Positions 12,701-58,076 are shown, numbered from the stretch's first letter. The stretch is 64,000 nt of DNA from Takakia lepidozioides (GCA_030704615.1 CM060732.1:81468001-81532000); one strand, 5' to 3'. Notes: generated from the sequence alone by a model not told the origin. A program made the numbers and translations.

Positions 12701-14072
12701 CCGCTATATTGTATGCACTGTTGGAGCTCTCTCAACCTACAAAAACAGCATAGAACAGAAAAAATACACTTGAACAAAAACAGGAAGTAAATGTGAGTAG
12801 GAGCCACAATACCAGCAACAACTCAAGAGGTCCAATCAAGGACCACTTGATGGCTTCCTTCAGAGACACAATCTGGTCGATCTCTTGGTCGGCGCAAAAC
12901 AGACCCTTTTCACTGAACTGTTGCTTCAGATGGTACCTGCTCATGTTTTTCTTAACATTTAGTACCACTTAGCTTCCAAAAGGCTAGTGCTGCCAACACC
13001 ATGAGGAAAATTCTAGGCAAAGTCAAACCTCATGTACTCCATCCCAAGGCCTGTAACAAATGGCGAGAAAAATGAAAATTTATTACCAAGAATAGAAGAT
13101 GAAAAAAAGAAAGTATTATTACGTCCATGGCAAGCCACACAGGACCCATCCAACACTGCAGAACAACAGAAAACAAAGAGTTGACTCATAGAGATTGACT
13201 CATGCCGTAGCTTGTGGCCATATACCCCATACACAGTTAGGATGGAACAAGAGGGAAGAGACACTACCTTAGTATGAATATAGTTTGGGTTTCCTCTAGA
13301 AAGCGCTTAACACAAGCATCAATCTGCTGTGTGTGAGCTGCCCAGCAATTAGCACCACGACCTGAATGGTTTCTAGAGATTTAACAGGGTTGGAATTGTT
13401 GACCCACACAGCAGATGCGTACTCCAAGGCCGGCCTAATAACATTGCAAAGCATGGTCCTTTGAACTTCAGTATTAATCCCTCTGCAGTGGAAAAATTTA
13501 TTGAGACCCAAAGCTTTGTGTTTAGCTGATTGAATCACTTTTTGTATATGCACATCCCAGTTATAGTTTCAGGAAAACTTTAAGCCGAACAAGAGAAATT
13601 GAGAGAGAATGTACTCATAAGACGTTTGCCGTAGCCTTGTGGCCATTGACCCCGCGCCCAGTTTGAGCGGAACACAAAGGGACAGAACCTACCTCTGTCA
13701 GGGGCTGGCGTCGGTAGTAAGAATTACCTTGAAACATTGATCCGGGTTTTCCAGATATCCTCTAGAAATCCCTTCACACAAGCATCAATCTGCTGTGTGT
13801 GGTTTGCCCAATAACTAGCCCCAGAAGGGCCTGGGCTTTTGGGTCAGCCTCGAGACTTTCAAAGTTGGTAAACAGAGGTACAGGCACAATTCCCTTGATA
13901 GAATTGAGGAGAGCGTCTCTCTGGTGAGAGAACCCCGGACAGTGAATCACAAAATGAACATTGTCTTCAGGTTGCCCACACAAGGGCAATTGCACTCTCC
14001 CTTTCCTCTCTGCTTCTGTTTGCTGTTCAAAGGTAGGCTTCCCGCCCTGAGTTTAAATTTCAGTCTAGTGAG

Positions 14073-14113
<41 letters not shown>

Positions 14114-15636
14114 ATTGTGGAAGACCGGAAAAAAGGGAAACATTGGAGGAAAAGAGATACCAAAGGGCGCGCTCCCTCACAAGAACAATCGCTGGAACTG
14201 ACACCTCCAAACAGAAGCTATCAAACTCATGGCCCTCCTTATGGGCTGCTTCCACAATCCGTCCTTTCGCTCCATGTCCTCCCCCCTTTTTCCCAGTTAC
14301 TGAACCCTCCTCTTTATCTTCATTGCCATCTAGAATGTGCAGCATACCTAGGCAGACAATGCACGGTTGGGGCATGCCCCCATAGCTGGGACCTATCAAA
14401 TTCTCTAAAGGAGTGTTGGGGTCAAAATCTGTTTCTGCTTTCTGAGCAGTTTCTGTTTCTCCAGCGATTTCTGTAGCCGCCTCAATCGACAGACTCTTGA
14501 GATGAGAGAGAAGCAGCAAGGGACTCGGTACTCTGACTGAGTAGTCGATGCTACGCTCATTAAGAAACCGGAGCATGCATCTTATGCACACCTGCATTGG
14601 CAGCAAACTTGGCATGATTAAATTATCCTCTGTTTCAAAGGTACTGCTGGAGTGAGAGTGATGCTGTCCTCACTCACCAGAAGGCGAAAGCATGACAGAC
14701 AGACAGAAAGAAACTTTGTAGAGTCCATGGAAAGCTCAGAGAGCTTGTAGCACAAAAGGAAGCATTATACAAGGCAAAAGAAGTTAGAGAGCCACCATCA
14801 CCGGTCAACCACAGAAATATAGTCATTCAGCGGGTTGAACTACACAGTTTGGGTGTTAGTTGTGATCTTGCCACATTCTTGGCTGACCACTAGCCTCACC
14901 AATATCCTGTGATAGCTTCACACATTCTTCACATGGCACCCACCAAGTCTCACACACCTCTTGTGCCAGGATGTATCCATTGAGTTCACCGGTTGATTTC
15001 CCTCCAGAACTAGAGGGAGGGTTTAGGGTTTTAATTGTAAGGTTAGTTGCTACACAGCAATTACAGTCTAAGACTAGAAAGAAAACATGGTCCAGCATAA
15101 GCAATAGACAAGCTAGCACAGGCTGTTAAACCCTCGACTTAGAAGTGGCAGATGGCTTTTTGAACTGTGGAACATTCAGACTTCACAAAGGCTTCGAGGC
15201 TGATCATGTAACTCCGGAGGCCCAAGAGACAAGTCAACTAAAGGGAAGAAATCAGCAGGAGGTCGAAGGCCTCAATGAGAACTAGACGTTTAGTTGAATC
15301 GTCTCCACACTAAACCCTACAATCAAAATTCTGAACCTTCCCTCTAGCTCTGGAGAGGTCGTGGTGCTTGGGACTCTCAGTTCTTTGTGCCATGTAGAGT
15401 ATGTTCAACTAATCACAGGACCATCTTCTTGAAGCTGTTGGCATGTGAAGATTTCAACTACGTACCAAGCAACCGATCACAAAGCACAAGGAAACACACT
15501 TTGACGCCCCACATGAAATTGATAAGGAGAGTTTCAAAGAGTTTAAAACGAAAAGGAGACGCACCCCATGTGAAAGTAGGTCGGAGACCACATCAGAGGG
15601 CAGCGATGGCAGCAGCAAACGCAAGGCTTCGTTCAT
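6783..15636 (-). CDS. PUS10: tRNA pseudouridine synthase Pus10, multi-exon
   Basis: Exons in order: MNEALRLLLPSLPSDVVSDLLSHG; VCIRCMLRF...ALW; IVSLKEAIKWSL; PVYVGGRYLK; YKFHAAGREDIDV; RMLGPGRPFILEISNAR; REGEAEKQ; KEYAAVVW; EIQQKTPIRVLHRRSPLIRPRTIHW; HYFLLFLCTQ; AGTYIKEFVHGDLGRTFP; ILQLDVMDVKMDFL*. These include the Pus10 catalytic GREDxDVR and AGTYIKEFVHGD motifs. Confidence 0.95.
7740..8180 (+). mobile_element. 5'-truncated LINE (RTE-like) 3' fragment in a PUS10 intron
   Basis: Degenerate C-terminal zinc-knuckle region FRVGSYNLRVETGRW...DRLCPAC, then a 3' UTR ending in ATTTC repeats. The same 3' end recurs near 7260, 11485, 11900, 12070, 14710, 39835 and 60640. Confidence 0.7.
11485..12190 (-). 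mobile_element. Three stacked 3' fragments of the same RTE-like LINE in a PUS10 intron
   Basis: Three copies of gaaatg...cagaaagctcaaagagcttatgggacaa at about 11485, 11900 and 12070. The first extends into the reverse complement of the 7740-8180 zinc-knuckle region. Confidence 0.7.
13185..14070 (-). mobile_element. Two fragments of a second LINE family in PUS10 intron 2
   Basis: RT-thumb-like HIQKVIQSAKHKALGL...NVIRPALEYASAVW and C-terminal KFKLRAGSLPLN...CPLCGQPEDNVHFVIHCP. The 3' end is duplicated (about 13185-13345 vs 13610-13800). Nearly identical to 63500-63600. Confidence 0.75.
14076..14112. repeat. (GA)n microsatellite
   Basis: Perfect GA dinucleotide run directly beside the LINE truncation point. 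Confidence 0.95.
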
Positions 15637-17619: not shown

Positions 17620-18822
17620 CTACAAGATTGCATGCAAATTGGGTCGGAATGGAAATTCCACATGCTTTCCTAGATTGGAGGCAATGAGAGGACAGGGAGG
17701 CAGCCATAGCCACTCGCCTTGACTTGTCTCATACACCGCAACCACCATCTCCTTGAAGGGTGTAGTGCCTGTCACACACACCCGGTTACCAGATGCCACA
17801 CAGCTTCCGACGTAAGCGAAAGTCAAGAAGATCTCTTGCGGCATTCTCATCCGTAAGGCCCACTGTTTACTTACGAGATCCAGTTCAAAGAAGCCAAAGC
17901 TAGGAGTGCCGTCCTTTCCCGTATGATTGATCATCATCAGCAATCGCCCTTCACATTCGAACAGGAATGGGACACCTTGGATACCTTTAGGGAGGCAGTG
18001 AGGAACCTCGCTCCATACATCTCCCTCGATATCGTAGGCAATCAATACATTGTACAAGTATGACATGGGTCTGCTTGCCAGGTGATAGCAGAATCCGTTG
18101 CAATAAGCACCTAATGGAGAGGGAAGGTACAGCGACGGTAGAAACTTTCCTCCGTTCTTCCATGTCCCCAATGTTGAGTCGTACACCTCGGTGATCTGGT
18201 AAGCTTCGTCAGCAACTTCGTACTTTTGATTCCCAGCCAGGATTATCTTGTATGATTTGGATGCTTCATCTGCGAATATATGCCTCACAGCAGGCTCCCG
18301 CCAGTCGTGGGTCAGAGGAGGCAGGTCAATCCAATGCGTCGTAATTGGGTTACAAACAGACACGACACTCGTAGTGGGAGACTCTTCCAAAGCCCACAGG
18401 CACAAGAGCCCTCCGGCTGCCCCAATTAACCGATGCTTGCCAGGCGGCGATGTAAATCGGCTCGGAAGGGGTGGCATTGCCTGCCACTTGCATCGATCAA
18501 AATCGTAAACTGCCCACCAAAATCCTTCTTGATGTCTTCGATCATTGACATAGCACACAGCAGGGTATGGATGCAAGCCAGGGGAAGCTGACATCGCAGA
18601 ACAGGTCTTCAGAAATTCAGGTTGAGAGATAAGAGATCGCCATCTCTTACAAACGCAGCGGAACCGAAACAAATAGGGGAACGACAAGCGGGCCAGAATT
18701 CTATCCAGCACTTCCAGAGGCAGCCCTCCCCACAGAGACTCATCCATCTGCGCTGTGTCTGCCTGCATCCTGTGACTAAACTGCACTGACCTCCCTCTTC
18801 TGTCCTCGCCATCCCCTAGCAT
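17620..18822 (-). CDS. F-box protein with a kelch-like/FBA beta-propeller C-terminus, intronless CDS, 400 aa
   Basis: F-box LWGGLPLEVLDRILARLSFPYLFRFRCVCKRWRSLI. Propeller motifs AAGGLLC, VCNPITTHWIDLPP, YKIILAG, TEVYDS...W, YDIEGDVWSEV, and terminal FPFRPNL. Confidence 0.92.
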   Translation of the reverse strand: MLGDGEDRRGRSVQFSHRMQADTAQMDESLWGGLPLEVLDRILARLSFPYLFRFRCVCKRWRSLISQPEFLKTCSAMSASPGLHPYPAVCYVNDRRHQEGFWWAVYDFDRCKWQAMPPLPSRFTSPPGKHRLIGAAGGLLCLWALEESPTTSVVSVCNPITTHWIDLPPLTHDWREPAVRHIFADEASKSYKIILAGNQKYEVADEAYQITEVYDSTLGTWKNGGKFLPSLYLPSPLGAYCNGFCYHLASRPMSYLYNVLIAYDIEGDVWSEVPHCLPKGIQGVPFLFECEGRLLMMINHTGKDGTPSFGFFELDLVSKQWALRMRMPQEIFLTFAYVGSCVASGNRVCVTGTTPFKEMVVAVYETSQGEWLWLPPCPLIASNLGKHVEFPFRPNLHAIL

Positions 18823-25310: not shown

Positions 25311-27544
25311 ATGCGTTCTAAGGCCTCTTACTGGGCGCAGCTATGTGAGCCCTGCCAGGGCTTAGCGAGAAAGCTTGGCTACGAGACACTAGCAAAGAAG
25401 GGTCCTAGCAAACATGCTGCCACTGTCCAGGCAGAAACAGAGAAAAAAATAAAAGAGATGGAGACAAAGATTGAAGAATCAGAAGAGCGTGATAGATCAC
25501 TGCAGCGGCAAGCGGAGTTCATGAGCGCCTGGGATCCCGTCGTTATGAGCCCTCAATATACCGACGTTTTATTGCAATCGGGTGGCCACGTCTTCCGTGC
25601 ACATAAAGCTATTCTTGTAATCTCCATACCCTGAATGAGTTTCTTCCTTATTACAGAACACAGACGTAGGGATGAAGCTGAAGAGTTGTGCAGCATCAAC
25701 TACTTATCAAAACGACAGGGAGAGAGAAGAGAGTTTAAGACATCAGAAATAGAGGTAGTAGAGAAGAGAGCAAAAAGATATGTTACCCTAAAGTAAGTAA
25801 CCCTGTATTGAGCATATGATGCTGCTTCACATCTCCTGTCTCCTAGCAGATTTGAGTAAAATTCTGCAAGCTGTCACATGTCAATTTAAGAGTGCAGTCC
25901 CAAAAACATTGCAAAACCCTATGTGATGGTTCATGACGAAGGGTATCTAGCCCTGCAAGCACAAAGCACACATGCTTGCCCGTTTGCATCCGAGATTTTC
26001 TTACTCTCAAGCCATACTTATAAGGGCCACGGCCGTAGCTTATCTCATGACAGGATTTTTGGAGTTTCCATATTTGGCACCCACGCCAGAATGAGAGGGA
26101 AGGTTTTGTTCTCACATGCCATCTCCAGTAGGTGCCAGGAAAGACCAGCACTCACCCAGAATGTAGCCATTGCTTAACCATGGCTCAGCACACAGATGAA
26201 GTAATGTCTATTTGCCCACAGCTGAACCCCTCACAAGACCTGTCTGGTAATGATAGCTATTGGTACTGTAAGACACAAAATTTCAAGCTATCATGCTTAA
26301 AATCTTTTGCCTTAGCAGGGAGGGACAGTGGATGGCTGCTTTCAGGCAAACTCCTACTCTTAACCATCTCATTCTGTCAGGCTAAAAGTGGGAGAGATGA
26401 TCCTTGTTTCTCAATCGACTAGCCAGGCCAAGGTGCCAGGTACCTGAGTGTTAGCAATGGGTGGCTGACATGCCTCACTCAACAAGTTTCCAAAAATCTA
26501 TACAGAAGAGGTGGGATATGAAAGGTCAGGAATCACTGCTAAACTGAGAGCTTCGAAGTTTCATGAGCAAAGCAGTCAATGCTCTTGTATCCAGACTTTC
26601 AGACTGCCACAAGTTGTAAAGAGAGAGTTTGCGGCTGTTTGAGAGTTAACTCAAGCAATCCACGTAGAAGGAACTGCTTTGAGGTCACAAAAACAAAGTA
26701 CACATTGACCAAGAAAGGAACCGATCTCAAAACTGTTCTGATTCAACCATTGCCAATTCTTGGCAGATTTTTTCATACATCTTGGTAGCGTTGATGTTAC
26801 TCTTGATATGGTCTCTCAAGACACTCTTGTAGCTAACGTAAATGCAATTACCTGCTACTCAAAACTTCTCTCTTTACTGTCTCTTTCGAGATCGATCCCC
26901 CATCTTTTGGAAGGCCTTTAGCTTCGAGGACCAGAAGTGAGTGGCAGCTTCGCTATCTCTCCGAGAAACGTATGGCTCCTTCGATGTGTTATGTTTGGTT
27001 TTCTCCTGTACTTCTGCTTTGTCCAGAGCCCCATGGACGACGTAAAGTTTGTAATACTGTGGGTCTACAAAATTCTCAAACCTCCTTCATGATGCAGGCT
27101 GCACATTCTGAAGTCTTTCTGAAGAAGTTCAACTCAAACCAAGGGCAACTCGATGTCGGTGCTGATGTGCCAGTAGAGGTCCACATTGTGCCAGACGCAT
27201 TGGACCCGTTTATACGATACTTTTATGCAGGCCATGTGACTGACAGGGACTTGAGAAATCATGCAGCAAAGCTTCTCACAGCAGCTGAGCGATATAGTGT
27301 TCGACCTTTGCAATTGCTTTCAGAGCGCTATCTGGCAAAACACGTGACCAAAGAGACAGCACTTAGTACATGGGAACTGGGTATGGATCATAACTCGGAC
27401 AGAATTAAGGACGCTGTGTTAGATACTCTTCGAAAGGATTTGAAGGATATACTGAGGCTTAGTGAGTACCGCATCTTCCGATCCCAAAAGAATCCCGAGC
27501 TGCTTGTCGACCTTTTCGAACAGCTAGTACAAAGAATGACATAA
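25311..27544 (+). CDS. BTB/POZ protein (At4g08455/SIBP1-like), exons 25311-25616 and 27098-27544
   Basis: LCEPCQ, coiled coil, FMSAW...YTDVLLQSGGHVFRAHKAIL|gtaa...gcag|AAHSEVF...FIRYFYAG...LLTAAERYSV...NPELLVDLFEQLVQRMT*. Confidence 0.88.
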
Positions 27545-33179: not shown

Positions 33180-34577
33180 TCATGCAGTCTCCACTAATCC
33201 TGTTTGCCTGGTTTTTTCTTCACTCTCAGCAGTAGTGGATGTCTCAGATACATCATCATCTGAGATGCATTCAAAGTCCTCGTCTTCTTCACATTCTGGA
33301 CCAAGCAAGACCCCAAAGAGATGTAAGGAGGGCAACAAAACAGCTCCTGTAAGTGCATGTAATGTCATTCACCGAAGTGAAATTCGTTTTTTGCATATGT
33401 TCACTTACAAATATATAGATGCAGTTAGAGCTGCCGCGAAGTGTTTGTGACACTAACGTTTTCTGTGAGAGAAAGAAACACTGGAAGTGAAGTAAGACAT
33501 TACCACAAAGTGGTCTGAATGTAGATCTCTTCAAGAGCCCAATGTAAAGCTCCAAGAGCAACTTAGGGTTCTGCTCTCTATAGTGGCGATATTCTCGGAG
33601 ATTCGCAATTGTTTTCCTGCTCTGCAAGGCCACTTGAATTGTAGCATCCCTTAGCACTTCACAGTTGTGCGTTTTGGCAAGATCAAATCTGCTAATCACA
33701 TTCTCCATTGAAATCGTATTCTCGGCCAAGTATTTCCCACAGACGTATTTCAAGTAGTCGAGCTCGAAGGCATCTCCAATAGACAGGAAATGTATTGCAT
33801 GCTTCTCCAAAACTTGAGTGGTGATGTCGCCCGTGTAGAAGAAGCGCACAAAGGCATGCAACTGCTCGTATGACATATCGTCAAAGATAACGACCCCACC
33901 CTTACCGTCCTTCAACCCTGCGGTGCTGTCATCGATCATGGCTTCCAGCAACCGCGATTTGCTCGCCTGTGTGTATAAATGTAGGTGAGAGATTCTCGAG
34001 AACTTCCAACCCGGAGACATACAGACACCAGCTCATTCACATGGCAACGATCGCTACCATGTCCGAAGCCATACTCGGAAGCATTCACAGCTACTAATTT
34101 GAATTCACGTTTCCAAAAACAGTCCATCAAAGGAGAATTTCTTTTTGTGAACCTGTAGGAGGGAGATTCGAATGGGGAATACAGTGGGGAATACTGAATT
34201 ACGTTTAGACAAGAAAGTTACAAGAATGAACTTGTGGCCTTGTACAACTTGATCGGCTGCTTCGTTAGGTTGGGAAGCCCTTTCAGCCTGTGCAGGAGTA
34301 TACCCAGCATTGGCAGCAGGGTCAGCTGTTGGACTGCTGTGATCGGGAGTAGCACCCTTATTGGTATCGTGATTGTCAGGCGCTGCAAGATTACTCTGAG
34401 CTGCCTTGAACGAAATGTCTGGAGGAAAAAATGTTTCTGTATCCGTCCACGTACTCAAGAAATCTACTTGGCCAACCCTTGCCTTGCTCTCTTCTTTCAA
34501 TCTTCTCAATCTCCTCAGAATATCTTCAAATTTCTGGTCTGATTTTAAATAGCAGCTTTCGCAATATACACTTCCAC
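33180..34577 (-). CDS. BTB/POZ module with an acidic tail; exons 34577-34222, 33966-33504, 33295-33180; lacks its own in-frame ATG (internal part of the upstream gene, or a pseudogene)
   Basis: YCESCY, coiled coil, FLSTW...GHKFIL|gtaac...acag|ASKSRLLEAM...FVRFFYTG...NPKLLLELYIGLLKRSTFRPLC-G|gtaatg...ccag|ECEEDEDFECISDDDVSETS...ETA*. Confidence 0.7.
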
Positions 34578-34816: not shown

Positions 34817-36421
34817 TCATTGACTTTGGTAGAAGTAGCCTGATATCTTACCGTGCTTGGACAGGTGACATGATGGATGGTAAGGCGTCACATAGGAAGA
34901 GTCCCATACAACAGGTCCTTCTGACTGAAATTTTAGAATGGGATGCAGATGTATAGACTGCGTTGGATCCTGGAACGGTTTCATGCACAATGCGCATCGA
35001 TAATCGAACCTGCGGCAGACTTCCTGTTTGTATTGAGACAAGAGTCGACGCATGTTTTTAAACCTCTCGTCTTCGTCGCCTTGCCTTCGTTGCAAATTAC
35101 CTAGGGAAACAGATCATACATAGCCGTTGAACTGGGGCTTCAAGCTCAGCTGGTAGATTTCTGACGTCCACACATACAGCCATTGGAAAGACCATGAAAA
35201 AGTGACACAGGAGTATTATTGTGCAGAGCCTATGGCGTATGATCCAAGTCTACTGTCTCAGCTGTAAAATGTTGAGTACTCACTGGCGGTACCTGGCTTG
35301 CGCACAGTTGTCTTTCTTAGGAGCTTTTCATACAGCTCCAGGAGTAATGGCAAGTCCTCTTGTACATACAAATCGTGTTCCTTGAGTGTTGGAATTTCAT
35401 CTTGACCAGCGGCCATAAGAACTCGAAGTGCAGCTTTTCTATTTACTTCAGAATCACATTGTTTCGCAATATCAAAGAGACTGATTGCATTCTCCTTTGA
35501 AACCACAGCTGAAAGGTACCTTGCACACACTGATTTCAGGAGCTTCACTTCATATGTCCGGGCTAGAAACAGGAGGTCTGCTGCGTGTCTTTCCAGAACA
35601 ACAGGGCAAATCGTAGCAGTGTAAAAGAAGCTAATGAATGCGCTCAATTGCTCGTGAAGCATATCTTGCATGTCAACGATGGGAATCGCTCCTGGAGTTG
35701 TCACAGCCTTCTCCTGTCCGGTCGTTCGCATTTCCTCGCTCTCAATATTAGCAGGTGGACAAAACATTGTTTTAAACAGCTGCGATCTGCTTGCCTGGGT
35801 ACCTTGCGCCACCGTACACAAAATTCTAAGATCTCTTCTAAGACGCATCTACCAGCCTAACTGTAGAACTTTTGGAGAAGAGAGCGTACAGTAATATGAC
35901 CAACGGGTCATAACCTTATTGTGCTGCGACTTTCCTGTGCCATCCCCCAGCGATGTAAAAACGCCATACACGGGGGTTGCATGTATACATAGAGAGAGGT
36001 GATAATGACTGGACATGTCTTACCAGTTAAGCATTTAAGTTTCTTTCTTTGAACCTTCTTGCGTCTCCATTCAATTATCCTACTAGGTGTGGAACTTCTT
36101 GTAAGCAAGGAGAGTGGAACAGACGAGAGGTTGAAAAGGGATTACAAGAATGAACTTGTGAGCTGGTATGGGAGGTCCATCGAGTGGTTGCAGTAAGACA
36201 TCGTGATGCAGACTTCTTGGAGGAATCCAGGTACTCAAAAACTCCATGCGGGGTATCCCAGAGTTTAATGACTTCACTCTGGCCTTGTATATCAGAGGGT
36301 GGCATGCAACGCAGTTTTTGCAACAGCGGACGACCCCTTCTGCCAGTCCGCACAATTCACACGCCACTCTGGTATCTGAGAAGGACGACGATGTTGTTGA
36401 AGCGCTGGGGGCAATCTCCAT
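34817..36421 (-). CDS. BTB/POZ protein with a C-terminal HNH-like module; exons 36421-36146, 35794-35293, 35100-34817 (or 35100-34852 spliced onward)
   Basis: CELC...CKNCVAC, FLSTW...DVLLQPLDGPPIPAHKFIL|gtaatc...ccag|ASRSQLFKTMF...FISFFYTA...LPLLLELYEKLLRKTTVRKP-G|gtaccg...ccctag|GNLQRRQ...FDYRCALC...IHLHPI...YHPSCHLSKHG. Confidence 0.75.
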
Positions 36422-49511: not shown

Positions 49512-50224
49512 ACACAACCTTACTAATCGATAACATGGACGAGTATCATCCGTCCATCTATAACTTTGGGAACACATTAGAGACGTTTACAAAACCTACG
49601 GGAACCTGCGAACAGGTCTTTCACCGAGATCTTTCGTCCCTGGCCCGATTGTAACCTGAGTTGGACCATTCTTTCAAATCCTGGCTTTGGAATGTAAATA
49701 GAATTACCCTTATGGTGGTATTTTTAATAGCATTACACCGATGCTTAGAGAACAACCTTCATGCTGCAAGTCTTGCGCTTCGTAGAGTTTGAGGATAGAA
49801 AGGAGCGGATTGCGTGAGATGTTGAAACTCGTTCGTCCACTCGTGGCCGGATGTCACGCCGGGTTTCGCCAGATTTCGCCGCGGGTCTGTTGAGAGACAA
49901 GCAAGGAAGGGGAGAGTGTCGCCAGGTTTCGCCGCGGTAGGTTGTGTAGGTGTCGACACCTCGAGGCGTCCGGAAGGAGGTCTTATCCTGTGCTAGAGTT
50001 AGGGTTTCAATTCGGGCCCTCCCTGTCTTTGCATGCCTCTGAGCAAGATCGATCTTGCTTGAGAGATTTTGCAGATTGCTCTGCTAGAATTCGAGAATTT
50101 GTGCGATTTGAGTGATGGGCTTTTGCCTGGAGAATGCGGAGGAAGCTCCTCCTGCAATTGTGGGAGGTTGAATGTTCCGGGAGTGCAATTCGGTGCAGGA
50201 AGTGCTGGATGAAAGTGCTGGGAA

Positions 50225-53200
50225 ATGAGGATGACGACACATGAGGCCACAACGAGTGCAAAGCTGTTTCCGAAGAAACGAAATCTGAGAGCGAGAGCTT
50301 CAGATACCGTTAGGAGTTTGAAATCGCAGGTGAAACGGTTGGAGAGACAAAGGGAGTTCTTGAGTCTTTGGAAACCAGACACGCACATTGGGGCAGATGT
50401 TGAGGGTTCCTATGTGGATGTTGAATTACGGGCCTCTGATGGTGTCCGAATTCATGCTCACAAGGCAGTCTTGGTCAGCTTTTGTGCCTTTCTCCCCATT
50501 GTTTACCTCTCCTGATTCTATCCAGAGACTGTAGAGGCGGACTTGGTAGACAGTAGGAAGATAAATAGATACTCGGATCCCTGCAAGCATGTAGCATGCA
50601 CAGTGAACTCTAAAGGAAATTGTGAACCATCTAATGAACTAGGGACTATCTAAAGGACTGAGGCATGATCATTACCCCCACAATTTCCTTGTTCAAGCAA
50701 CTACTATCAATTTCCTGGAGCCTTGCAGCCATAGACCCACCAAAGGGAGAGTCTTGTGAATGTCGTATGTCTTACTCCAATATAGTGAGGATGAACTAAG
50801 TGCCCGCTAGTCTGTCAGCCTCATGTGGTCTTTGGTAAGAGAGTAGATGTTGTTTATCCATGGAATTGAACTATTTGGGCAGGGGATGGTGGATTATGCT
50901 TCAACATGGACTCACAAGGCTAATTGCAGGTGGCCAAGTCCAAAGCATTTGAGGCGATCTTTCGAGCGGATAAAAATGTCAAGGTTTTGGAGGTACCCGA
51001 CATGGATCATGAGGAATTAAAAGCCTTTGTAAACTTTTTCTACACTGCAACTGTCAGCATCAGTGTTATGGCAGAACGGATGACCTCTTTTCTGCGTGCG
51101 GCAGACAAATATAAGGTCCATTATCTTACAGTACTATGTGAGGATGCTCTGGTGGCCAACCTTTCTAGAGAGAATGCAATCACTACTTTTGATATAGCTA
51201 AGAAGCATTGCTCCATCAATGCCAAGGAAGCCGTGCTTAAGAAGGCGATCAAAATGGGGGAACTCTCAACATTTGATGAGTACAAATTGTATTCCCAAAA
51301 GGATCCCGGATTGCTGCTGGAGCTATATGAGCAATTGTCAGAACGGATAGGGCCATTACTGGCTAAAAGACGGCGAGTCACTCCAGGCAAGTACCACTAG
51401 CAATGTACCACTAGCAATGTAGTCCACATCATCTCTGTCATGTTGCCAACCAATGTATCTGAAAATTGTAGTCTGGTAGGGTTGAAGGCCTACTATTGCT
51501 CAATATGCAACCACTCTGCAAAAAGGAAGCATAGTCACAGTGGAAAGACCAGTTCCGTAACTATTGATGATTCTGTATATGTGGGGGTGTCCGCTGGACT
51601 GGTATTGTTGCGGTGCATTGAGGCAAGTAGTCTCTGCCTGGACCACCTTAGTGCAACAATCCCTTTCAAACTGACTAGGCTCCAGAGAGGAATTTAGACA
51701 TTTGTGGGTTGAGGATGGAACCTCTTAGTACATCATCCCGTGCTGATGGATTGGTTTGAAGCCATGGCAGCAGAGTAGCCAAGGCATACCAGTGTATGGG
51801 GTCTTTCCATAACCGCAGTAGTTTACCTTTTGCTCAATGATTTTTTTGCAATTTCTCTACTGAAAGCAGAACTCGAGAAATTGTGCATTGTATGCAAACT
51901 ATTGTTCAGTGCAGTTTGAGACTTTATCCTTTTATAAAAATTTAGGGTACTTGCCATAAACCTGATTTACATTGACTTTAATGGGGTTCAACTGTGTGGG
52001 CATGTTGTGCCTAGCACCTTTTAGCAGTTTGAAAGAATCTATTCTACAATGTAGATTTGAACTGAGGCTCTTATGATGGCTAATCTATCTAGTAGTTGGA
52101 ATCCAACTTTTTCATCGAACCTGAATTTGGAAAGCCAATATAATATACAGAATAGCTTGCAGATTATGCTAAACCACTTAAAGTTGGTTGGTTTTTATTG
52201 CTTGATTTCTGCATGCAGAGAATGGCACTGGTGAGCATGAGGTGAACAATACCTGCATCATGTATGATGGGGTAAATGACAAATCAGACACTGATGAAGA
52301 TGAAGGTGAGGACGACCAGAAGGGAGATGATAAAGAGATCAAGCAAGAAGGAGAGGGCGATGCGACTTTAGGTAATTTGATGACTTTCTAAGTTTGATGT
52401 CTACGTGTCTGAGCAACAGTCTCTGTTTGTTTTGGTGGGTCCCAGTTTGCCTTGTTTTATTGCAGGATTGCTCCAGGCATAGTGTGGGACTCATCAATTA
52501 GTTTGACACACAGAATTGGCTGGTGTGCAGGAGGTTCAGTAGCCCTCAACGGATTGCCTCCGTTTGGGGGTGGTGGTGGAGCAGGGTGGTGGCCTGGAGC
52601 AGCCATTCAACCCCAGCATGGGCGACCCTTTCCTGCTGGCTATGATAAGAGCATGTATGGTCCAGGTCAGAGGCCGGCTTTTGATGGGTCCATGATGCCC
52701 AGTTCACCCTATGGTGTGGCTCCACCCTTTATGCCTCAGATGTATACTGGTGGCATTCCTAGGTGAGAGTCATGGTCTTACATTCTTCATATTTTCCTGT
52801 CCATATTAGGTTGACAGCCCATATTCATTTTTTCAGACTGACGGAGTTGGCTACAGTCTACATATTCTACTGAGGGTTGGCCAAATAATAATCATTGGTG
52901 CTCTATCATATACAATTTTGTGTAGGTTTTTTTATATTCCAATGGCTTGTAATTCAAGGTTCTCATGCATCATACTACTTGAGGGTCTGCATTACAGGAG
53001 TATGTATAAGATGTACCAGCCCAGAGTCACAATCTTGATGGGCACATGCTAGTGGCTGCTGATCTGGTGCTAAAAGAGTTCTGGAAGTGTTTCTGCCTTT
53101 CCAATTCCCGCTATTTATTCTGTTCGTTTTAAGAGGCTGGGCTCACTCTGTATACAGGTATTGTTGTAACTATTGAGTTATGAATGTGACTTGATTCAGA

Positions 53201-54352
53201 GTATTTATGGGAGCTGTGGGCCCGGGGTTGCCTAGTCCTGGGGAAAGGCCTGCCGGTGGCGAGGAGCTTGTCATTCAAGAACACAAAGGGAAGAAGATGT
53301 CAGAAGCCCAAGCCAAACTTGAGGGTAAACGGGGACAGAACTGGACTAATAGTGAGGTGGAAACTCTGATTGCGTTGAGGGGTGAAATGCATGACGAGTT
53401 TGAGAGAAACAAGCAGAAACAGGGTATGTTACCTCTTACAAACTCTTTACGTATTGGAACGTTTTTGTATGCTCTCCTAAAACCCTGAAAAGAATTGTGC
53501 AGGGACTGGTGCAGAGGGAAGTGTGCCCTGGACCAGGCCCTGTTGATGGGCACATGTAGTGGGGTTGGGCGAGGCCAACATAGGCCACATTACCTTCCCC
53601 ATTGTCCCTTTAATTTAAACCCAACAAGAGCTCTGGACCCAGACAGTTGCCTCCAATAGTGTATAGCAGGTCATGCTGTCAGCACCACTCAGAAGCCTCG
53701 TGTTCAGATTGACCCAAAGCCGTGCATTTAGCAGGAGGGGCTGGAGCTGCAGAGCACATGACTGAGAAGCAGACCTAGGAGGTCACATAGGCTAGTTATG
53801 GGCCCAGGCCAGTTTGATGGGGACCAGTGGTAAGGCTGTATTTCTTTGAGGTTAGATAGGTGGAGTAATCTGAGCACCAATTTGCTTGTTGTTTCCTAGA
53901 GAGAATTGGCTCCTGAGTCTCAAGGCAATTACAGAATTGATGAACTATGGTTCATGGTTCAATCTTAGAGGTAGTATTGAGGAAAATATCCAGTTCTAAA
54001 ATCTCATGGTTAACCAGCAGCTTTTTTTGATTGGCTTGCAGGTGTAAATACTTGGAGCAAACTCCATGTCAGGATGCTTGGAATGTGCAGAGGGTTCCGC
54101 AAAAGTGCAAATGCTTGCAAGAAGAAGTACTCTATCCTTTATAATGAATACAAAAAGGACAGAGAATCTACTAACAGTGAGTCAGGTAGCATTAACAAGA
54201 ACAGCAAGAAGTGTGCATACTTTGAGCAGATGGACATGTGGCAACTGCATAGGCCTCGTATCAAAAGCCATGCTGATGCTAGTGCTGGAGACACTACAGA
54301 TAGTCCCTGCTCTAGTAGGGAGGAGGAAATAGAGATCAAAGAGGAAGAGTAG
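50225..54352 (+). CDS. BTB/POZ - acidic - Gly/Pro-rich - trihelix (Myb/SANT-like) fusion protein; exons 50225-50473, 50930-51386, 52219-52371, 52531-52762, 53200-53423, 54042-54352
   Basis: BTB: FLSLW...YVDVELRASDGVRIHAHKAVL|VAKSKAF...DPGLLLELYEQL. GC donor CCAG|gcaagt at 51387. All later junctions are in frame. Trihelix: KRGQNWTNSEVETLIALRGEM...GVNTWSKLHVRM...FRKSANACKKKYSILYNEYKK...CAYFEQMD. Confidence 0.8.
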
Positions 54353-54736
54353 GATATGTCCATCCAACCCTTAGGCAACAGAGAAGGATATAGTAAGACT
54401 GAGGGCATGCTCAAGAATATGAAAATATAAAGCACACAAATTAGCTTTTCGACTAACCAATGCGTTCCTTCAGGGAATGGACAGCCACATGGCTTCACTT
54501 GTTGGAATTGCATACATCAATTTCCCTGATTGTCATGTTTGTGCCATACATGTATTGGTCCTCTTGAGCTAGAATTAGTCTCAAATGAAAATAGGAGAAC
54601 AGGTGGGCAGCATTCAAGAGCCTACTTGACAGTGTGTCCAAACTATTGGTCCATACTACTGGTGGATGTTTGATGTATCCCATGTTCATTTGTGCACAAC
54701 CAAGACCCCTTCAGGCCCTGAACTCTGGGTACACAC

Positions 54737-55960
54737 CAGTGTTGGACTGGTATAGGGTAAGTTGGCCTATGACCGAACAGGCGTCTATGACCGAACACCC
54801 TATTAACGCCTCTGTCAGTACCTATGACCATGTAAGTGCTGGTCCCAAGACTGTCCATTTTTGCCACTTGGTAAACAATCATTCGATATAACCCCCCCAA
54901 AAGTGTGGGTGGTCATAGGGCTCTTGGTGTATACCATTGTTGTATATAGGGTCTGGCCGGGTATCAACCAGGGTATTGAATGACCGACCCGGTTGGTATT
55001 GGCTTTTGTAATACTATGGTTAATAACCGACCCGGCTGGTATTGGCATTTCCAATACTATGGTTGAAAATCGGACCGGCTGGTATTGCCTTGGCAATACC
55101 CGGGTGCATACCCGTATTATGGGCAAAACAACCATGGTATGAATAGGAAATTGGCTTTTGTAATACTATGGTTAATAACCGACCCGGCTGGTATTGGCAT
55201 TTCCAATACTATGGTTGAAAATCGGACCGGCTGGTATTGCCTTGGCAATACCCGGGTGCATACCCGTATTATGGGCAAAACAACCATGGTATGAATAGGA
55301 AATTGGCTAGGTGCAGGGTCAGGTAAGAGGGTGCACATGTCAGGGAGGGCATGTCCAGCCCCAAGGGCATGCCACTATGCTTCATTTCTTACCACATGTC
55401 CCACCCCTGTTCTTTATTTTAAAGAATTGGTCGGATGATGTACGGACGGATTGCAAGGTGGTTTCGCACGGGATCAAGGATTTCTTTTTGTCGGAAGACA
55501 ATTTCATTGATGAATATGAGGACCTCATTGCAGATGCTAGTTTATTTGACGATGAGGAGGGTTGCAATCAGTCTTCTTTTAACTAAGCTTGCTTCAATTT
55601 GGATACTAAAATCTGCAACGTTGTTATTATGTAATGCAAAGACTGAATTTTGCAACATAATAATTAATTTCCTTGTGAAATCAACTGAAATCTTCTAAAT
55701 TCAATATATATTAATGATTTAGTGGTTTTGTTATTTTATTTTATTTATACCCGGGTTGATAACCGGCTGGTATTAGATTGGAATACCCATCCTATTGATA
55801 CCTGTCCGCAAATCGAAAATCATACTACTATTGAGAACCGGCGGGTATTAAAATTGAGAGAATCTTTCAATACTATGGAACCGGCTGGTATTGCAAATTA
55901 ATTTCTTTTCAATACCCAGACCCGGCTGGTATTAGAAAAAGTAATACCCACCCAACACTG
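54737..55960. mobile_element. hAT-like non-autonomous DNA transposon with an internal 152-bp tandem duplication
   Basis: TIR CAGTGTTGG...CCAACACTG and many subterminal ccggctggtatt motifs. 55001-55152 is repeated at 55153-55304. The internal KNWSDDVRTDC...acidic stretch may be a transposase C-terminal remnant. Confidence 0.65.
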
Positions 55961-56550
55961 GTGTATACAAGCATTCTGATTGGTTCGACTTTGAAACCCT
56001 ACAACTTTGTGTAGGATTCATGAAATCAAATACCGACCCTGGACAACCGTTTAGGCGATAATTAATTCAAAATGAAAGTGCCTAATCAATTCTGTGAATT
56101 TTTCAGATTTTGGCCTAATAGTTGGGAAATTATGGGACCAATGTGCCTAATGCCCAAAAATTCCACCAAAAAACTTGCGAGCCTCTTCTCAAGTTGTTTG
56201 CAATAAGATCAAAATTTCTTTGAACAAAAATCAATACAAATATATGCATGCGAAAATAACTAGCCTACCAGCCTACCACAACTCAAGAGTACCATTATGT
56301 AAGAGGTTTCACCATGCACCAGCATACCAATATGAAAACCAGTGTACCCAATGACCAATGTATCAAAGCCCTGAACCAGCGTGCCTACCCAATGACCAAT
56401 GTACCAAAGCCCTGTACCAACGTGCCTACACTAGTGTGGACTACCAATATTGAACTCACCTAAAGTGTGAGAGCAAAGGGAGAGCTTGCCTGTACTGGCT
56501 TGAGCCTTGGAGCACCGCGTACAACAAAGAGGGGCATTTTTAGGGTTTCA

Positions 56551-57183
<633 letters not shown>

Positions 57184-57211
57184 TTAACTAATAAACTAAA
57201 TGATTTAGATC

Positions 57212-57421
57212 TTAAATTATCATGAAATCCAGTAAATTTTCTTGATTCTTCATCTCTTTTCCATTCTCGATGGGATTTAAGTAAAATTCGGGAAGTAAAC
57301 TAAATAATTCTCGATCTGGAACTTCTTTTGGTACGATTCCTTCCGGTTGAGACAAAATTTGATCCGCTAGATTTAAATAAAATTCACGGACGTAGTTGAG
57401 AGAAGGTTGGGATTCAACCGT
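57212..57421 (-). pseudogene. chlL: chlL 3' fragment, NUPT
   Basis: Reads [49 protein letters not shown], then an apparent frameshift to [11 protein letters not shown]. It lies directly upstream of chlN, as in plastomes. Confidence 0.85.
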
Positions 57422-57521
57422 ATAGATTAATATATATCTTAAGGAAAAAATGCTTCTAAAGCGAATAAATATTTCGGCTCTTTCATCCCATCAAAATTAA
57501 CAAAATCTGGGAGACTTTGTT

Positions 57522-58076
57522 ACGAATTGGCAATCTGAATGGCTTCGAGTAGAACCTATAATAGGTTCTAGAAGAATAAGTAATTTTTGCAGGGCGTGCA
57601 TTATTCTGTTGGGTGCATTAGGATTCTTTTCAGTTGGAATTTCTAGTCACTTCGGTAAAGATTTAATACCCTTTCTATCATCCCAGCAAATTCTTTTTGT
57701 CCCACAAGGAATTGTAATGTGCTTTTATGGTATTGCAGGTCTGTTTCTCAGCCTCTATTTATGGCGTACAATTTTGCGGAGTGTAGGTAGTGGCTACAAC
57801 CAATCCGATAAACGAGAAAAAATCATTTGTCTTTTTCGTTGGGGATTCCCCAAAGAAAATCGTTGTATTCGTATCCAATCTCTCATGAAAGATATCCAAG
57901 CAATACGTATGGAGGTTCGCGAAGGTATTTATCCCTGTCGTATCCTTTATATGAAAATAAAAGGTCAACAAGATGTTCCTTTAACTCGTATTGCGGAAAA
58001 CTTAACTCCGGGAGAAATGGAGGAAAAAGCTGCGGAGTTGGCTCGATCCTCGCGCGTATCAATCGAAGGACTCTAA
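57522..58076 (+). pseudogene. ycf4: ycf4 (photosystem I assembly factor), full-length NUPT copy with an ACG start
   Basis: ACG-AAT-TGG-CAA-TCT-GAA-TGG...GSRRISNF...[19 protein letters not shown]...FRWGFP...[16 protein letters not shown]. Confidence 0.92.

What the first reader, a model, noticed from the sequence alone, without database searches (positions are those of the whole stretch)
50225..54352. BTB-trihelix (Myb/SANT-like) fusion created by a GC-AG intron
Seen in sequence: the BTB ORF appears to end at 51400, but CCAG|GCAAGT at 51386/51387 matches the GC-donor consensus. Splicing to tgcag|AG at 52219 keeps the frame. The three further junctions (52371>52531, 52762>53200, 53423>54042; phases 1, 2, 1) also stay in frame through to the stop at 54352. 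The product is BTB, then a basic NLS-like KRRR, acidic DTDEDEGEDD, a Gly/Pro/Met/aromatic low-complexity segment, and a GT-type trihelix (W-x-x-x-E-x-x-x-LI...W...CKKKY..L..EYK...YFEQMD). No separate first exon for the trihelix part is evident. I do not know this architecture among described plant BTB classes (MATH, ankyrin/NPR, TAZ, NPH3, ARM, TPR). Inference: either a DNA-targeted CUL3 adaptor, a BTB-dimerised transcription factor analogous to animal BTB-ZF proteins, or a decoy. Retention of the GC intron would give a BTB-only isoform.
Basis: partly seen in the sequence, partly recalled or inferred. Interest (0 to 1): 0.85.

Follow-up and report, generated by a model that had tools for sequence, protein, structure and literature searches.

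The report
Moss BTB-trihelix fusion gene, expressed
This is one real, expressed six-exon moss gene (most likely Takakia) whose protein joins a SPOP-like BTB-BACK self-association module to a GT-type trihelix DNA-binding domain. The architecture is conserved under purifying selection across mosses and already sits unnamed in Sphagnum protein sets, but no paper in the searched library mentions it.

Summary
Two transcriptome-like public runs from two studies each hold a single ~2 kb contig joining all six exons at exactly those junctions.

- **The GC donor did not create the fusion.** The same six-exon gene, with the same intron positions, occurs in Sphagnum and in at least two other unidentified lineages. 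There the equivalent donor is an ordinary GT.
- **Both domains are constrained.** dN/dS is 0.04-0.16 for the BTB and trihelix parts, with saturated dS.
- **The architecture is not absent from databases.** Sphagnum magellanicum KAH9558166.1 and S. jensenii CAK9233559.1 / CAK9276688.1 are uncharacterised full-length models. Both BTB and Myb_DNA-bind_4 score above Pfam thresholds in them.
- **No paper in the searched library combines the two domains**.

The BTB part folds like SPOP BTB-BACK but lacks the phi-x-E CUL3 contact. The trihelix is nearest to Arabidopsis GT-1.

My best reading is a self-associating nuclear DNA-binding regulator, with CUL3 coupling unresolved. I rate it a new variant of a known kind, of moderate interest.

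The parts
50019..50224 (+). 5' leader of the mRNA, carrying five upstream ATGs
   Evidence: The X1 transcript contig starts at 50019 and the X2 contig at 50042. The upstream ATGs were counted.
50225..50473 (+). Exon 1 (aa 1-83): basic N-terminus, a conserved helix (SLKSQVKRLERQREFL) and the first BTB strands
   Evidence: Translation. The Pfam BTB match covers residues 61-83. It is 61-71% identical from residue 1 in L002 and L007. The joint 50473>50930 is present in both runs.
50930..51386 (+). Exon 2 (aa 84-235): remainder of the BTB domain, 3-box/BACK-like helices, and KRRR at aa 229-232
   Evidence: Pfam BTB 2.5e-12. phmmer aligns it to SPOP residues 220-368 at 6.7e-10. dN/dS is 0.04-0.16.
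51387..52218 (+). Intron 2, GC-AG, 832 nt, phase 1. It holds the in-frame TAG (51398-51400) inside a 14-nt tandem duplication.
   Evidence: Sequence. It is skipped in both transcript contigs. Orthologous introns carry GT donors.
52219..52371 (+). Exon 3 (aa 236-287): acidic segment (DTDEDEGEDD...)
   Evidence: Translation. It is conserved in L002, L006 and L007. Sphagnum proteins have the same junction...ITP|ENGAGDHD.
52531..52762 (+). Exon 4 (aa 287-364): Gly/Pro/Met/aromatic low-complexity segment with the conserved motif YGV-PPFMP
   Evidence: Translation. Composition is G 17 and P 14 of 76 residues. Alignment and dN/dS of 0.15-0.28.
53200..53423 (+). Exon 5 (aa 364-439): linker and helix 1 of the trihelix (NWTNSEVETLIALR...)
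   Evidence: Pfam Myb_DNA-bind_4, profile positions 2-31. Alignment A3.
54042..54352 (+). Exon 6 (aa 439-541 plus stop): trihelix helices 2-3, a fourth helix (CAYFEQMDMW) and a conserved acidic tail (DSPC.S..E.EIKEE)
   Evidence: Pfam Myb_DNA-bind_4, profile positions 35-87. There are 56 invariant columns among 7 sequences. GT-1 is the only significant match among solved structures for the orthologous region.
54353..54528 (+). 3' UTR, at least to 54528
   Evidence: Both transcript contigs end at 54528.

Best explanation
This is a single nuclear gene of a moss, most likely Takakia lepidozioides. It is transcribed and spliced into one mRNA for a 541-aa protein.

The protein has these parts in order:
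- an N-terminal helix;
- a SPOP-type BTB domain with 3-box/BACK helices;
- a KRRR basic patch;
- an acidic stretch;
- a Gly/Pro/aromatic low-complexity linker;
- a C-terminal GT-type trihelix (Myb_DNA-bind_4) domain with a fourth helix and an acidic tail.

The gene is an old, conserved moss gene, with orthologues in Sphagnum and at least two other lineages. It is not a recent accident. The GC donor is a T>C variant of a conserved GT intron.

Inferred mechanism: the trihelix binds DNA sequence-specifically (GT-element-like sites), while BTB-BACK makes the protein self-associate. The result would be a multivalent, dimeric or oligomeric DNA-bound regulator, analogous to animal BTB-zinc-finger or BTB-HTH factors. 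The phi-x-E CUL3 contact is missing, so strong canonical CUL3 recruitment is less likely, though not excluded.

Shown here: gene structure, expression, splicing, domain identity, conservation and purifying selection. Inferred only: DNA binding, self-association, nuclear location and the relation to CUL3.
For: - **Splicing and expression:** two runs from two studies each hold one contig joining all six exons.
- **Frame:** 541 codons with no internal stop.
- **Domains in the window:** BTB and Myb_DNA-bind_4 by Pfam.
- **Domains in full-length Sphagnum orthologues:** BTB 5e-20 and Myb_DNA-bind_4 1e-12, both above the curated cutoffs.
- **Colinear orthologues:** L002, L006, L007, L011, L015 and L016 have the same intron positions and phases.
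- **Linkage:** in the one metagenome scan, the two E6-like exons with enough upstream DNA (L015, L016) both have the BTB exons upstream.
- **Selection:** dN/dS is 0.04-0.16 for BTB and 0.07-0.15 for the trihelix, with saturated dS.
- **BTB fold:** the AF2 model of the Sphagnum BTB-BACK has pLDDT 90. Its best matches are SPOP BTB-BACK (4.6e-9), then KBTBD2, KEAP1 and KLHL3.
- **Missing CUL3 contact:** the alignment to SPOP has a 3-residue gap exactly at M233-E234-E235. [quoted passage not shown]
- **Trihelix:** GT-1 (2ebi, 2jmw) is the only significant solved relative, at 2e-4, and is also the top Foldseek row.
- **Organism:** the plastid-derived ycf4 at 57609-58076 is 90% identical to Takakia lepidozioides Ycf4, with the next best at 79%.
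Against: - No experiment or computation here shows DNA binding, self-association or nuclear localisation.
- The homodimer prediction gave no verdict.
- All the nearest structural relatives of the BTB part are CUL3 substrate adaptors, not BTB-ZF transcription factors. This favours the rival reading.
- The trihelix model is only moderately confident (core pLDDT 63-81) and its Foldseek match to GT-1 is not significant on its own (E 0.49).
- The third conserved aromatic of the trihelix is Tyr rather than the Trp seen in GT-1.
- The exact placement of a gap in a loop alignment is uncertain. However, no phi-x-E is conserved in that loop in any of the orthologues.
Confidence: 0.55

Rival explanations
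1. It is a DNA-targeted CUL3 substrate adaptor. The SPOP-type BTB-BACK recruits CUL3-RBX1, and the trihelix takes the place of the MATH substrate-binding domain. The ligase would then be brought to particular DNA sites to ubiquitylate chromatin-bound proteins, or the protein itself would be turned over there.
For: - The BTB part aligns with SPOP through the 3-box/BACK region.
- Its model's best structural matches are all CUL3 adaptors: SPOP, KBTBD2, KEAP1, KLHL3, KBTBD4 and vaccinia A55.
- The nearest ESM Atlas shapes are plant At4g08455-like BTB-BACK, BTB-TAZ and BPM/SPOP clusters.
- From general knowledge, most plant BTB classes tested bind CUL3.
Against: - The phi-x-E motif is absent. The alpha3-beta4 loop is 3 residues shorter exactly where SPOP has M233-E234-E235, and no such motif is conserved in the orthologues. 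This motif is the largest CUL3 contact in the solved complexes, and mutating it severely disrupted CUL3 binding (PMC3616122).
- There is no MATH or other substrate-binding domain.
- No CUL3 sequence was available to test a complex.
Confidence: 0.33
2. The main product is a BTB-only protein. The GC donor is weak, the intron is usually retained, and translation stops after four extra residues (239 aa). The full-length fusion would be a minor or regulatory isoform, or retention would act as an NMD switch.
For: - GC-AG introns show lower average splice-site usage than GT-AG (PMC6310983).
- RNA-derived Sphagnum contigs retain the orthologous intron, even though it has a GT donor (P0170, P0176, P0177, P0179; L010).
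Against: - Both runs of this organism hold only the spliced form, with zero depth in the intron-2 bins from 51470 to 52177.
- Except for the C at +2, the donor matches the consensus perfectly.
- The downstream exons are under strong purifying selection.
- L010 also retains intron 4, so it looks like partly processed pre-mRNA.
- The early stop is not conserved. In Sphagnum the read-through runs for about 38 residues (P0004, P0176) or about 70 (P0170, P0177, P0179).
Confidence: 0.07
3. These are two neighbouring genes (a BTB gene and a trihelix gene) joined only by read-through, a chimeric assembly, or a processed copy elsewhere in the genome.
For: The BTB frame has an in-frame stop 12 nt beyond the donor, so an ab initio caller that allows only GT donors would end the gene there.
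Against: - Two independent runs give the same contig with five precise intron removals.
- Exon order and phases are the same in at least four other lineages.
- Independent Sphagnum annotations call one 533-551 aa protein.
- RNA-derived Sphagnum ORFs span E1 to E4 in frame (P0328).
- The trihelix part has no start codon or first exon of its own.
Confidence: 0.02

Closest known systems
Uncharacterised Sphagnum proteins KAH9558166.1 (CY35_07G122700, S. magellanicum, 533 aa) and CAK9233559.1 / CAK9276688.1 (S. jensenii, 551 aa; UniProt name 'BTB domain-containing protein')
   Same: They are orthologues with the same six-exon structure and the same domain order. The BTB-to-acidic junction is the same (ITP|ENG...). 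Identity to the window's exons is 61-72% for E1 and E2 and about 70% for the trihelix exons.
   Different: The intron-2 donor is GT there and GC here. The S. magellanicum model uses an acceptor 18 codons further into exon 3. Neither entry has a functional description or a trihelix annotation in its name.
SPOP / plant BPM (MATH-BTB) CUL3 adaptors, and plant At4g08455-like BTB-BACK proteins
   Same: They share the BTB fold followed by 3-box/BACK helices. SPOP is the best match by sequence (6.7e-10) and by structure (4.6e-9, 28-31% identity).
   Different: This protein has no MATH domain. The phi-x-E CUL3 contact is deleted. It has an extra conserved N-terminal helix and a C-terminal DNA-binding domain.
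Plant trihelix (GT) factors, e.g. Arabidopsis GT-1 (PDB 2ebi, 2jmw)
   Same: It matches Myb_DNA-bind_4. The three helices carry the first two conserved Trp residues, followed by a basic stretch and a fourth helix of the (F/Y)(F/Y)xx(L/I/M) type. GT-1 is the only significant solved relative.
   Different: The third conserved aromatic is Tyr. The domain lies at the C-terminus of a BTB protein, and I know of no described GT clade that carries a BTB domain. Clade membership among GT-1, GT-2, SH4, SIP1 and GT-gamma was not tested.
Animal BTB-zinc-finger factors (PLZF, BCL6) and insect BTB-HTH/ZnF factors (GAGA, Pipsqueak, Bric-a-brac)
   Same: The design logic is the same: an N-terminal BTB self-association domain, a disordered linker and a C-terminal sequence-specific DNA-binding domain (general knowledge).
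   Different: The DNA-binding fold is different (trihelix, not C2H2 or psq). The BTB is of the SPOP/BACK type, not the BTB-ZF type. The origin in plants is independent, so this is analogy and not membership.

Membership tests
BTB/POZ domain (PF00651) | Profile match above the curated cutoff | tested here: met
   Window exon 2 alone scores 47.4 bits against a cutoff of 20.5. The Sphagnum orthologue scores 72 bits over profile positions 2-109.
BTB/POZ domain (PF00651) | BTB fold | tested here: met
   The AF2 model of orthologue residues 30-245 has pLDDT 90.2. Foldseek finds 142 PDB matches at E<=0.001, and every one of the 50 listed is a BTB protein. This was done on the Sphagnum orthologue, not on the joined window protein.
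SPOP/BPM-type CUL3 substrate adaptors | 3-box/BACK helices after the BTB domain | tested here: met
   phmmer aligns exon 2 with SPOP residues 220-368. Foldseek aligns 170-190 columns with SPOP BTB-BACK. A window paralogue hits BACK_BPM_SPOP weakly.
SPOP/BPM-type CUL3 substrate adaptors | phi-x-E motif in the alpha3-beta4 loop (the main CUL3 contact) | tested here: not met
   There is a three-residue gap opposite SPOP M233-E234-E235. The loop is equally short, and without the motif, in all orthologues. The motif's importance is documented in PMC3616122.
SPOP/BPM-type CUL3 substrate adaptors | N-terminal MATH substrate-binding domain | tested here: not met
   Neither exon 1 nor the full-length orthologues give a MATH hit.
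SPOP/BPM-type CUL3 substrate adaptors | Physical binding to CUL3 | not testable with these tools
Plant trihelix / GT factors (Myb_DNA-bind_4, PF13837) | Profile match above the curated cutoff | tested here: met
   The orthologues score 48.7-49.4 bits against a cutoff of 27. In the window the domain is split by intron 5, giving 20.2 bits (profile 2-31) plus 26.8 bits (profile 35-87). The joined window protein was not searched.
Plant trihelix / GT factors (Myb_DNA-bind_4, PF13837) | Three helices with regularly spaced conserved aromatic residues (W, W, then W/F/I) | tested here: inconclusive
   The alignment to GT-1 shows the first two Trp residues conserved and Tyr at the third position. AF2 gives three helices with pLDDT 63-81.
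Plant trihelix / GT factors (Myb_DNA-bind_4, PF13837) | Fourth amphipathic helix downstream | tested here: inconclusive
   The motif K-K-C-A-(Y/F)-F-(E/D)-Q-M-D-M-W is invariant or nearly so in 7 sequences. It is predicted helical, but at pLDDT below 50.
Plant trihelix / GT factors (Myb_DNA-bind_4, PF13837) | Binding to GT elements | not testable with these tools
   This needs DAP-seq, PBM or EMSA.
U2-type GC-AG introns | GC donor in an otherwise consensus site, AG acceptor, and removal in RNA | tested here: met
   The sites are CAG|GCAAGT ... TGCAG|AG. The intron is removed in both runs. GC-AG makes up 1.2% of plant introns (PMC6310983).
Animal BTB-ZF transcription factors | C2H2 zinc fingers C-terminal to the BTB domain | tested here: not met
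   No zinc-finger family was hit in any exon or orthologue. The resemblance is functional analogy only.

The most novel reading that the evidence does not exclude
Mosses may have independently evolved a BTB-plus-DNA-binding-domain class of regulators on a SPOP-type BTB-BACK chassis. The same chassis appears to carry different C-terminal modules in paralogues: the trihelix here, and another conserved exon type in L008, L009 and L017. The BTB-BACK would then do one of two things. It could build higher-order, SPOP-like nuclear assemblies on DNA. Alternatively it could bring a CUL3 ligase to defined genomic sites, making a 'DNA-addressed' E3 ligase, a kind I know of no description of in plants.
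Probability: 0.25. Interest if true: 0.75.

Novelty: new variant of a known kind. Interest (0 to 1): 0.5.

Why it matters
- **A new plant BTB class.** As far as I know, plant BTB proteins are catalogued as CUL3 adaptors with protein-binding partner domains (MATH, NPH3, TAZ, ankyrin, ARM, TPR). BTB fused to a sequence-specific DNA-binding domain is regarded as an animal design (BTB-ZF, BTB-HTH). This gene shows that at least some mosses have had such an architecture for a long time, that it is expressed, and that both halves are under selection.
- **A testable case.** It allows a direct test of whether a SPOP-type BTB-BACK lacking the phi-x-E contact still engages CUL3, or has become a pure oligomerisation module for a transcription factor.
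- **An annotation lesson.** A single GC donor is enough for a gene caller restricted to GT donors to truncate this gene to a BTB-only model.

Tried and rejected
1. **Representative-library search.** phmmer of exon 2 against the 1.84-billion-protein representative library returned no hit longer than 308 aa at E<1e-20. No trihelix was found among the 150 best hits. I first read this as 'architecture not annotated'. It was a clustering artefact, because exact look-up of a Sphagnum exon-6 ORF found full-length 533-551 aa proteins in its cluster.
2. **Length-filtered searches.** The search for homologous proteins on exon 6 and exon 2 returned only genomic ORF fragments, since its length filter excludes the full-length proteins.
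3. **Homodimer prediction.** Complex prediction on two copies of Sphagnum BTB-BACK residues 30-245 scored 0.03 and gave no verdict. This is no evidence either way.
4. **ESM Atlas.**
   - Exon 6 found only generic Myb_DNA-bind_4 and MADF clusters.
   - The full-length Sphagnum protein gave no usable hit.
   - The shape search with the BTB model found no cluster combining BTB with Myb_DNA-bind_4.
5. **Weak dsrm hits.** They appear downstream of the paralogous BTB genes L008 and L009 at E 0.08-0.2. They are probably spurious. The shared exon (..KASI.VNGK.H.LG..KTQEEAAHLYDR) looked AP2-like to me, but neither Pfam nor PDB sequence search supports any family.
6. **Literature.** No paper combines a BTB domain with a trihelix domain, and nothing was found on Takakia BTB genes.
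7. **Takakia's own ORFs.** They are not in the protein collection, so the existing annotation of this locus could not be seen.
8. **Joined window protein.** It was concatenated only inside a script, to count codons and stops. Natural full-length Sphagnum orthologues served as proxies.
Full report
**1. Observation**

Gene model and sequence:
- I read 49800-54700, translated each proposed exon by reference and checked the junctions by script.
- The model is E1 50225-50473, E2 50930-51386, E3 52219-52371, E4 52531-52762, E5 53200-53423 and E6 54042-54352.
- It gives 1626 nt and 541 codons with only the terminal stop.
- The donors are GT, GC, GT, GT, GT and every acceptor is AG.
- The E2 donor is CCAG|GCAAGT, which matches the consensus apart from the C at +2.
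- If intron 2 were kept, the frame would stop after four more codons at 51398-51400, giving a 239-aa product.

Domains:
- Pfam finds BTB across the E1 tail and E2 (E2 alone 2.5e-12).
- It finds Myb_DNA-bind_4 split by intron 5: E5 covers profile positions 2-31 and E6 covers 35-87.

Handling of the joined protein:
- It was concatenated only inside a script, to count codons.

**2. Expression and splicing**

- The look-up of sequencing runs returned two runs of the same organism from two studies.
- They hold 0.41 and 0.36 of the stretch's words, which is about the exonic share.
- Read laying showed one contig in each run, of 2008 and 1991 nt.
- Each contig covers 50019/50042 to 54528 and skips exactly five segments.
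- Four of the joints resolve to GT..AG.
- The fifth, reported as 51383>52216 with three ambiguous letters, is equivalent to 51386>52219, which is GC..AG.
- The intron-2 bins from 51470 to 52177 have zero depth, and no contig starts between the BTB and trihelix parts.
- A contig lacking five introns is RNA-derived, whatever the library record says.
- These are contigs, so rare isoforms and expression levels cannot be judged.

**3. Conservation**

Source of the related loci:
- Homology searches with single exons returned ORF fragments from metagenomes and Logan assemblies.
- I fetched their contigs.
- tblastn with the window's exon pieces then showed all six exons, colinear and on one strand, in these loci:
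  - L002 (Logan);
  - L006 (a 174-kb ENA contig);
  - L007 (ENA);
  - L011 and L012 (JGI);
  - L015 and L016 (JGI).
- L013 and L014 are cut off by contig ends but hold the downstream exons.

Intron 2 in the relatives:
- Intron positions and phases are the same in all of these loci.
- The E2 donor is GT in every relative: CAG|GTGATT, CTG|GTAAAT and CAG|GTATGT.
- The GC in the window is therefore a derived T>C change in a conserved intron.
- GC-AG introns make up about 1.2% of plant introns (PMC6310983).

Selection between the four lineages:
- dS is saturated (at least 0.97, or not computable).
- dN is 0.15-0.22.
- dN/dS is 0.04-0.16 for BTB exon 2 and 0.07-0.15 for the trihelix exons.
- It is 0.15-0.44 for the acidic and low-complexity exons.
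- Both halves are thus kept by purifying selection.

**4. Who has it, and is it annotated?**

Organism of the window:
- A plastid-derived insert lies downstream at 56.5-58.1 kb and holds a chlN fragment and ycf4.
- Its ycf4 is 90% identical to Takakia lepidozioides Ycf4, and the next best match is 79%.
- The window is therefore most likely from Takakia.

The Sphagnum orthologues:
- Exact look-up of ORFs from L011 placed that species in Sphagnum.
- The neighbouring gene clusters with a S. troendelagicum protein.
- The exon-6 ORF clusters with three full-length proteins:
  - KAH9558166.1 (S. magellanicum, 533 aa);
  - CAK9233559.1 (S. jensenii, 551 aa);
  - CAK9276688.1 (S. jensenii, 551 aa).
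- All three are uncharacterised.
- Pfam on them gives BTB at 57-162 (about 5e-20) and Myb_DNA-bind_4 at 401-499 in the 533-aa model and 419-517 in the two 551-aa models (about 1e-12).
- The S. jensenii models read ...KRRRITP|ENGAGDHD across the junction, mirroring ...KRRRVTP|ENGTGEHE in the window.
- The S. magellanicum model reads ...KRRRITPG|TGKSDSG, because it uses an acceptor 18 codons further into exon 3.

What this means for novelty:
- No paper in the searched library combines the two domains.
- Takakia's own ORFs are not in the collection.
- The lineages behind L002, L006 and L013 carry no names.

**5. Intron retention**

- Several JGI proteins of the Sphagnum type (P0170, P0176, P0177, P0179) have E1 spliced to E2 and then read into intron 2.
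- Their contig L010 has introns 1 and 3 removed and introns 2 and 4 retained.
- Others (P0328, P0329) have E1 to E4 correctly joined.
- Transcripts retaining intron 2 therefore exist in Sphagnum, but they look like partly processed RNA.
- No such form is seen for the window's organism.

**6. What the parts are**

The BTB part:
- Its closest solved relative by sequence is SPOP, aligned over residues 220-368, i.e. through the BACK region (6.7e-10).
- The AF2 model of the Sphagnum BTB-BACK has pLDDT 90.2.
- That model matches SPOP BTB-BACK best (4.6e-9, 28-31% identity), followed by KBTBD2, KEAP1, KLHL3, KBTBD4 and vaccinia A55.
- In the ESM Atlas it resembles plant At4g08455-like BTB-BACK, BTB-TAZ and BPM clusters. 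None of these carries a trihelix.
- The alignment to SPOP has a three-residue gap exactly at M233-E234-E235, the phi-x-E motif.
- According to PMC3616122, phi buries the most surface in the three BTB/CUL3 complexes, and the E-to-A change severely disrupted binding.
- The loop is equally short in all orthologues.
- A conserved N-terminal helix precedes the BTB domain, at pLDDT about 90.

The trihelix part:
- Its model is moderately confident (core pLDDT 63-81). It shows three helices plus a fourth.
- GT-1 is the only significant solved relative by sequence (2e-4) and the top, though not significant, Foldseek row.
- The first two signature Trp residues are kept and the third position is Tyr.
- The C-terminal tail (DSPC.S..E.EIKEE) is also conserved.

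**7. Mechanism**

Shown:
- One expressed, spliced gene for a BTB-BACK, disordered linker and trihelix protein.
- It is old and constrained.

Inferred:
- The trihelix gives sequence-specific DNA binding.
- BTB-BACK gives self-association.
- KRRR and the basic N-terminus give nuclear import.
- The protein would be a multivalent DNA-bound regulator, analogous to animal BTB-ZF factors.

The main rival:
- It could be a CUL3 adaptor addressed to DNA.
- The SPOP-like fold speaks for this and the missing phi-x-E against it.
- The two readings are not mutually exclusive.
- I put 0.55 on the regulator reading and 0.33 on the adaptor reading.
- The homodimer prediction gave no verdict.

**8. Context**

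- The window holds three further BTB paralogues, at about 25.4-27.5 kb (+), 33.3-34.0 kb (-) and 35.3-35.8 kb (-).
- Earlier notes of this scan (s1-459418, s1-460508) read them as a modular family.
- In relatives, the paralogous loci L008, L009 and L017 have the same BTB-acidic-PPFMP chassis but a different conserved downstream exon.
- In L005 and L017 the BTB and acidic parts share one exon.
- This suggests the chassis predates the choice of C-terminal module, but I did not establish what that other module is.

**9. Verdict**

- This is a new variant of a known kind (BTB plus a DNA-binding domain). It is present but unnamed in databases and not described in the literature I could search.
- Interest is 0.5.

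Noticed in passing
window 56548-58076: A plastid-derived insert in nuclear DNA. It holds a chlN fragment on the minus strand (NCBIfam subunit N, 1.6e-56) and ycf4 on the plus strand. Local GC drops to 0.38. Several codons read Arg where plastid proteins normally have Cys or Trp (e.g. TFRP, IRIGTRT), as expected for unedited C-to-U RNA-editing sites. The ycf4 is 90% identical to Takakia lepidozioides, which identifies the organism.
   Followed up: partly
window 25407-27544 (+), 33289-34020 (-), 35258-35848 (-): Three further BTB paralogues lie in the same window, 32-39% identical to exon 2. One gives a weak BACK_BPM_SPOP hit. None has a trihelix detectable by tblastn. This overlaps the earlier notes s1-459418 and s1-460508.
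   Followed up: partly
L008 5053-5256 and 6929-7015; L009 5764-5943; L017 1998-2192: Paralogous BTB loci in relatives share a conserved downstream exon ending ...KASI.VNGK.H.LG..KTQEEAAHLYDR, present twice in L008. It looks AP2-like by eye. Pfam gives only weak dsrm or FKBP-like_N rows and PDB gives nothing, so its family is open.
   Followed up: partly
window 51391-51418: A 14-nt unit (GTACCACTAGCAAT) is tandemly duplicated starting 4 nt behind the GC donor. The TAG that ends the unspliced BTB frame lies in the first copy.
   Followed up: no
window 50019-50224: The 5' leader of the mRNA carries five upstream ATGs with short ORFs of 9-36 codons. Three of these ORFs end just past the main ATG.
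   Followed up: no
L010 (JGI 3300056985) against L007: A Sphagnum RNA-derived contig has introns 1 and 3 removed but introns 2 and 4 retained. Four protein variants read from exon 2 into intron 2.
   Followed up: yes
P0317 against P0322: The S. magellanicum gene model joins exon 2 to an acceptor 18 codons inside exon 3 (ITPG|TGKSDSG). The S. jensenii models use the acceptor equivalent to the window's. This is either an annotation difference or an alternative acceptor.
   Followed up: no
window 53594-53879 and 54753-54792: Run X1 holds a low-depth (3.2) 290-nt contig inside intron 5, carrying a 4-nt insertion. Both runs hold a high-depth contig that shares only 40 nt with 54753-54792. These are probably repeats or another transcript.
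   Followed up: no
window 17620-18822 (-) and 13947-14615 (-): A single-exon F-box / beta-propeller (KIB1-4-like) ORF of 400 aa, and an ORF with a eukaryotic Pus10 N-terminal match.
   Followed up: no
L011 5839-6948 (-): The Sphagnum orthologue lies about 3 kb from a penicillin-binding-protein-type peptidoglycan glycosyltransferase gene (Transgly). It clusters with a 1018-aa S. troendelagicum protein.
   Followed up: no
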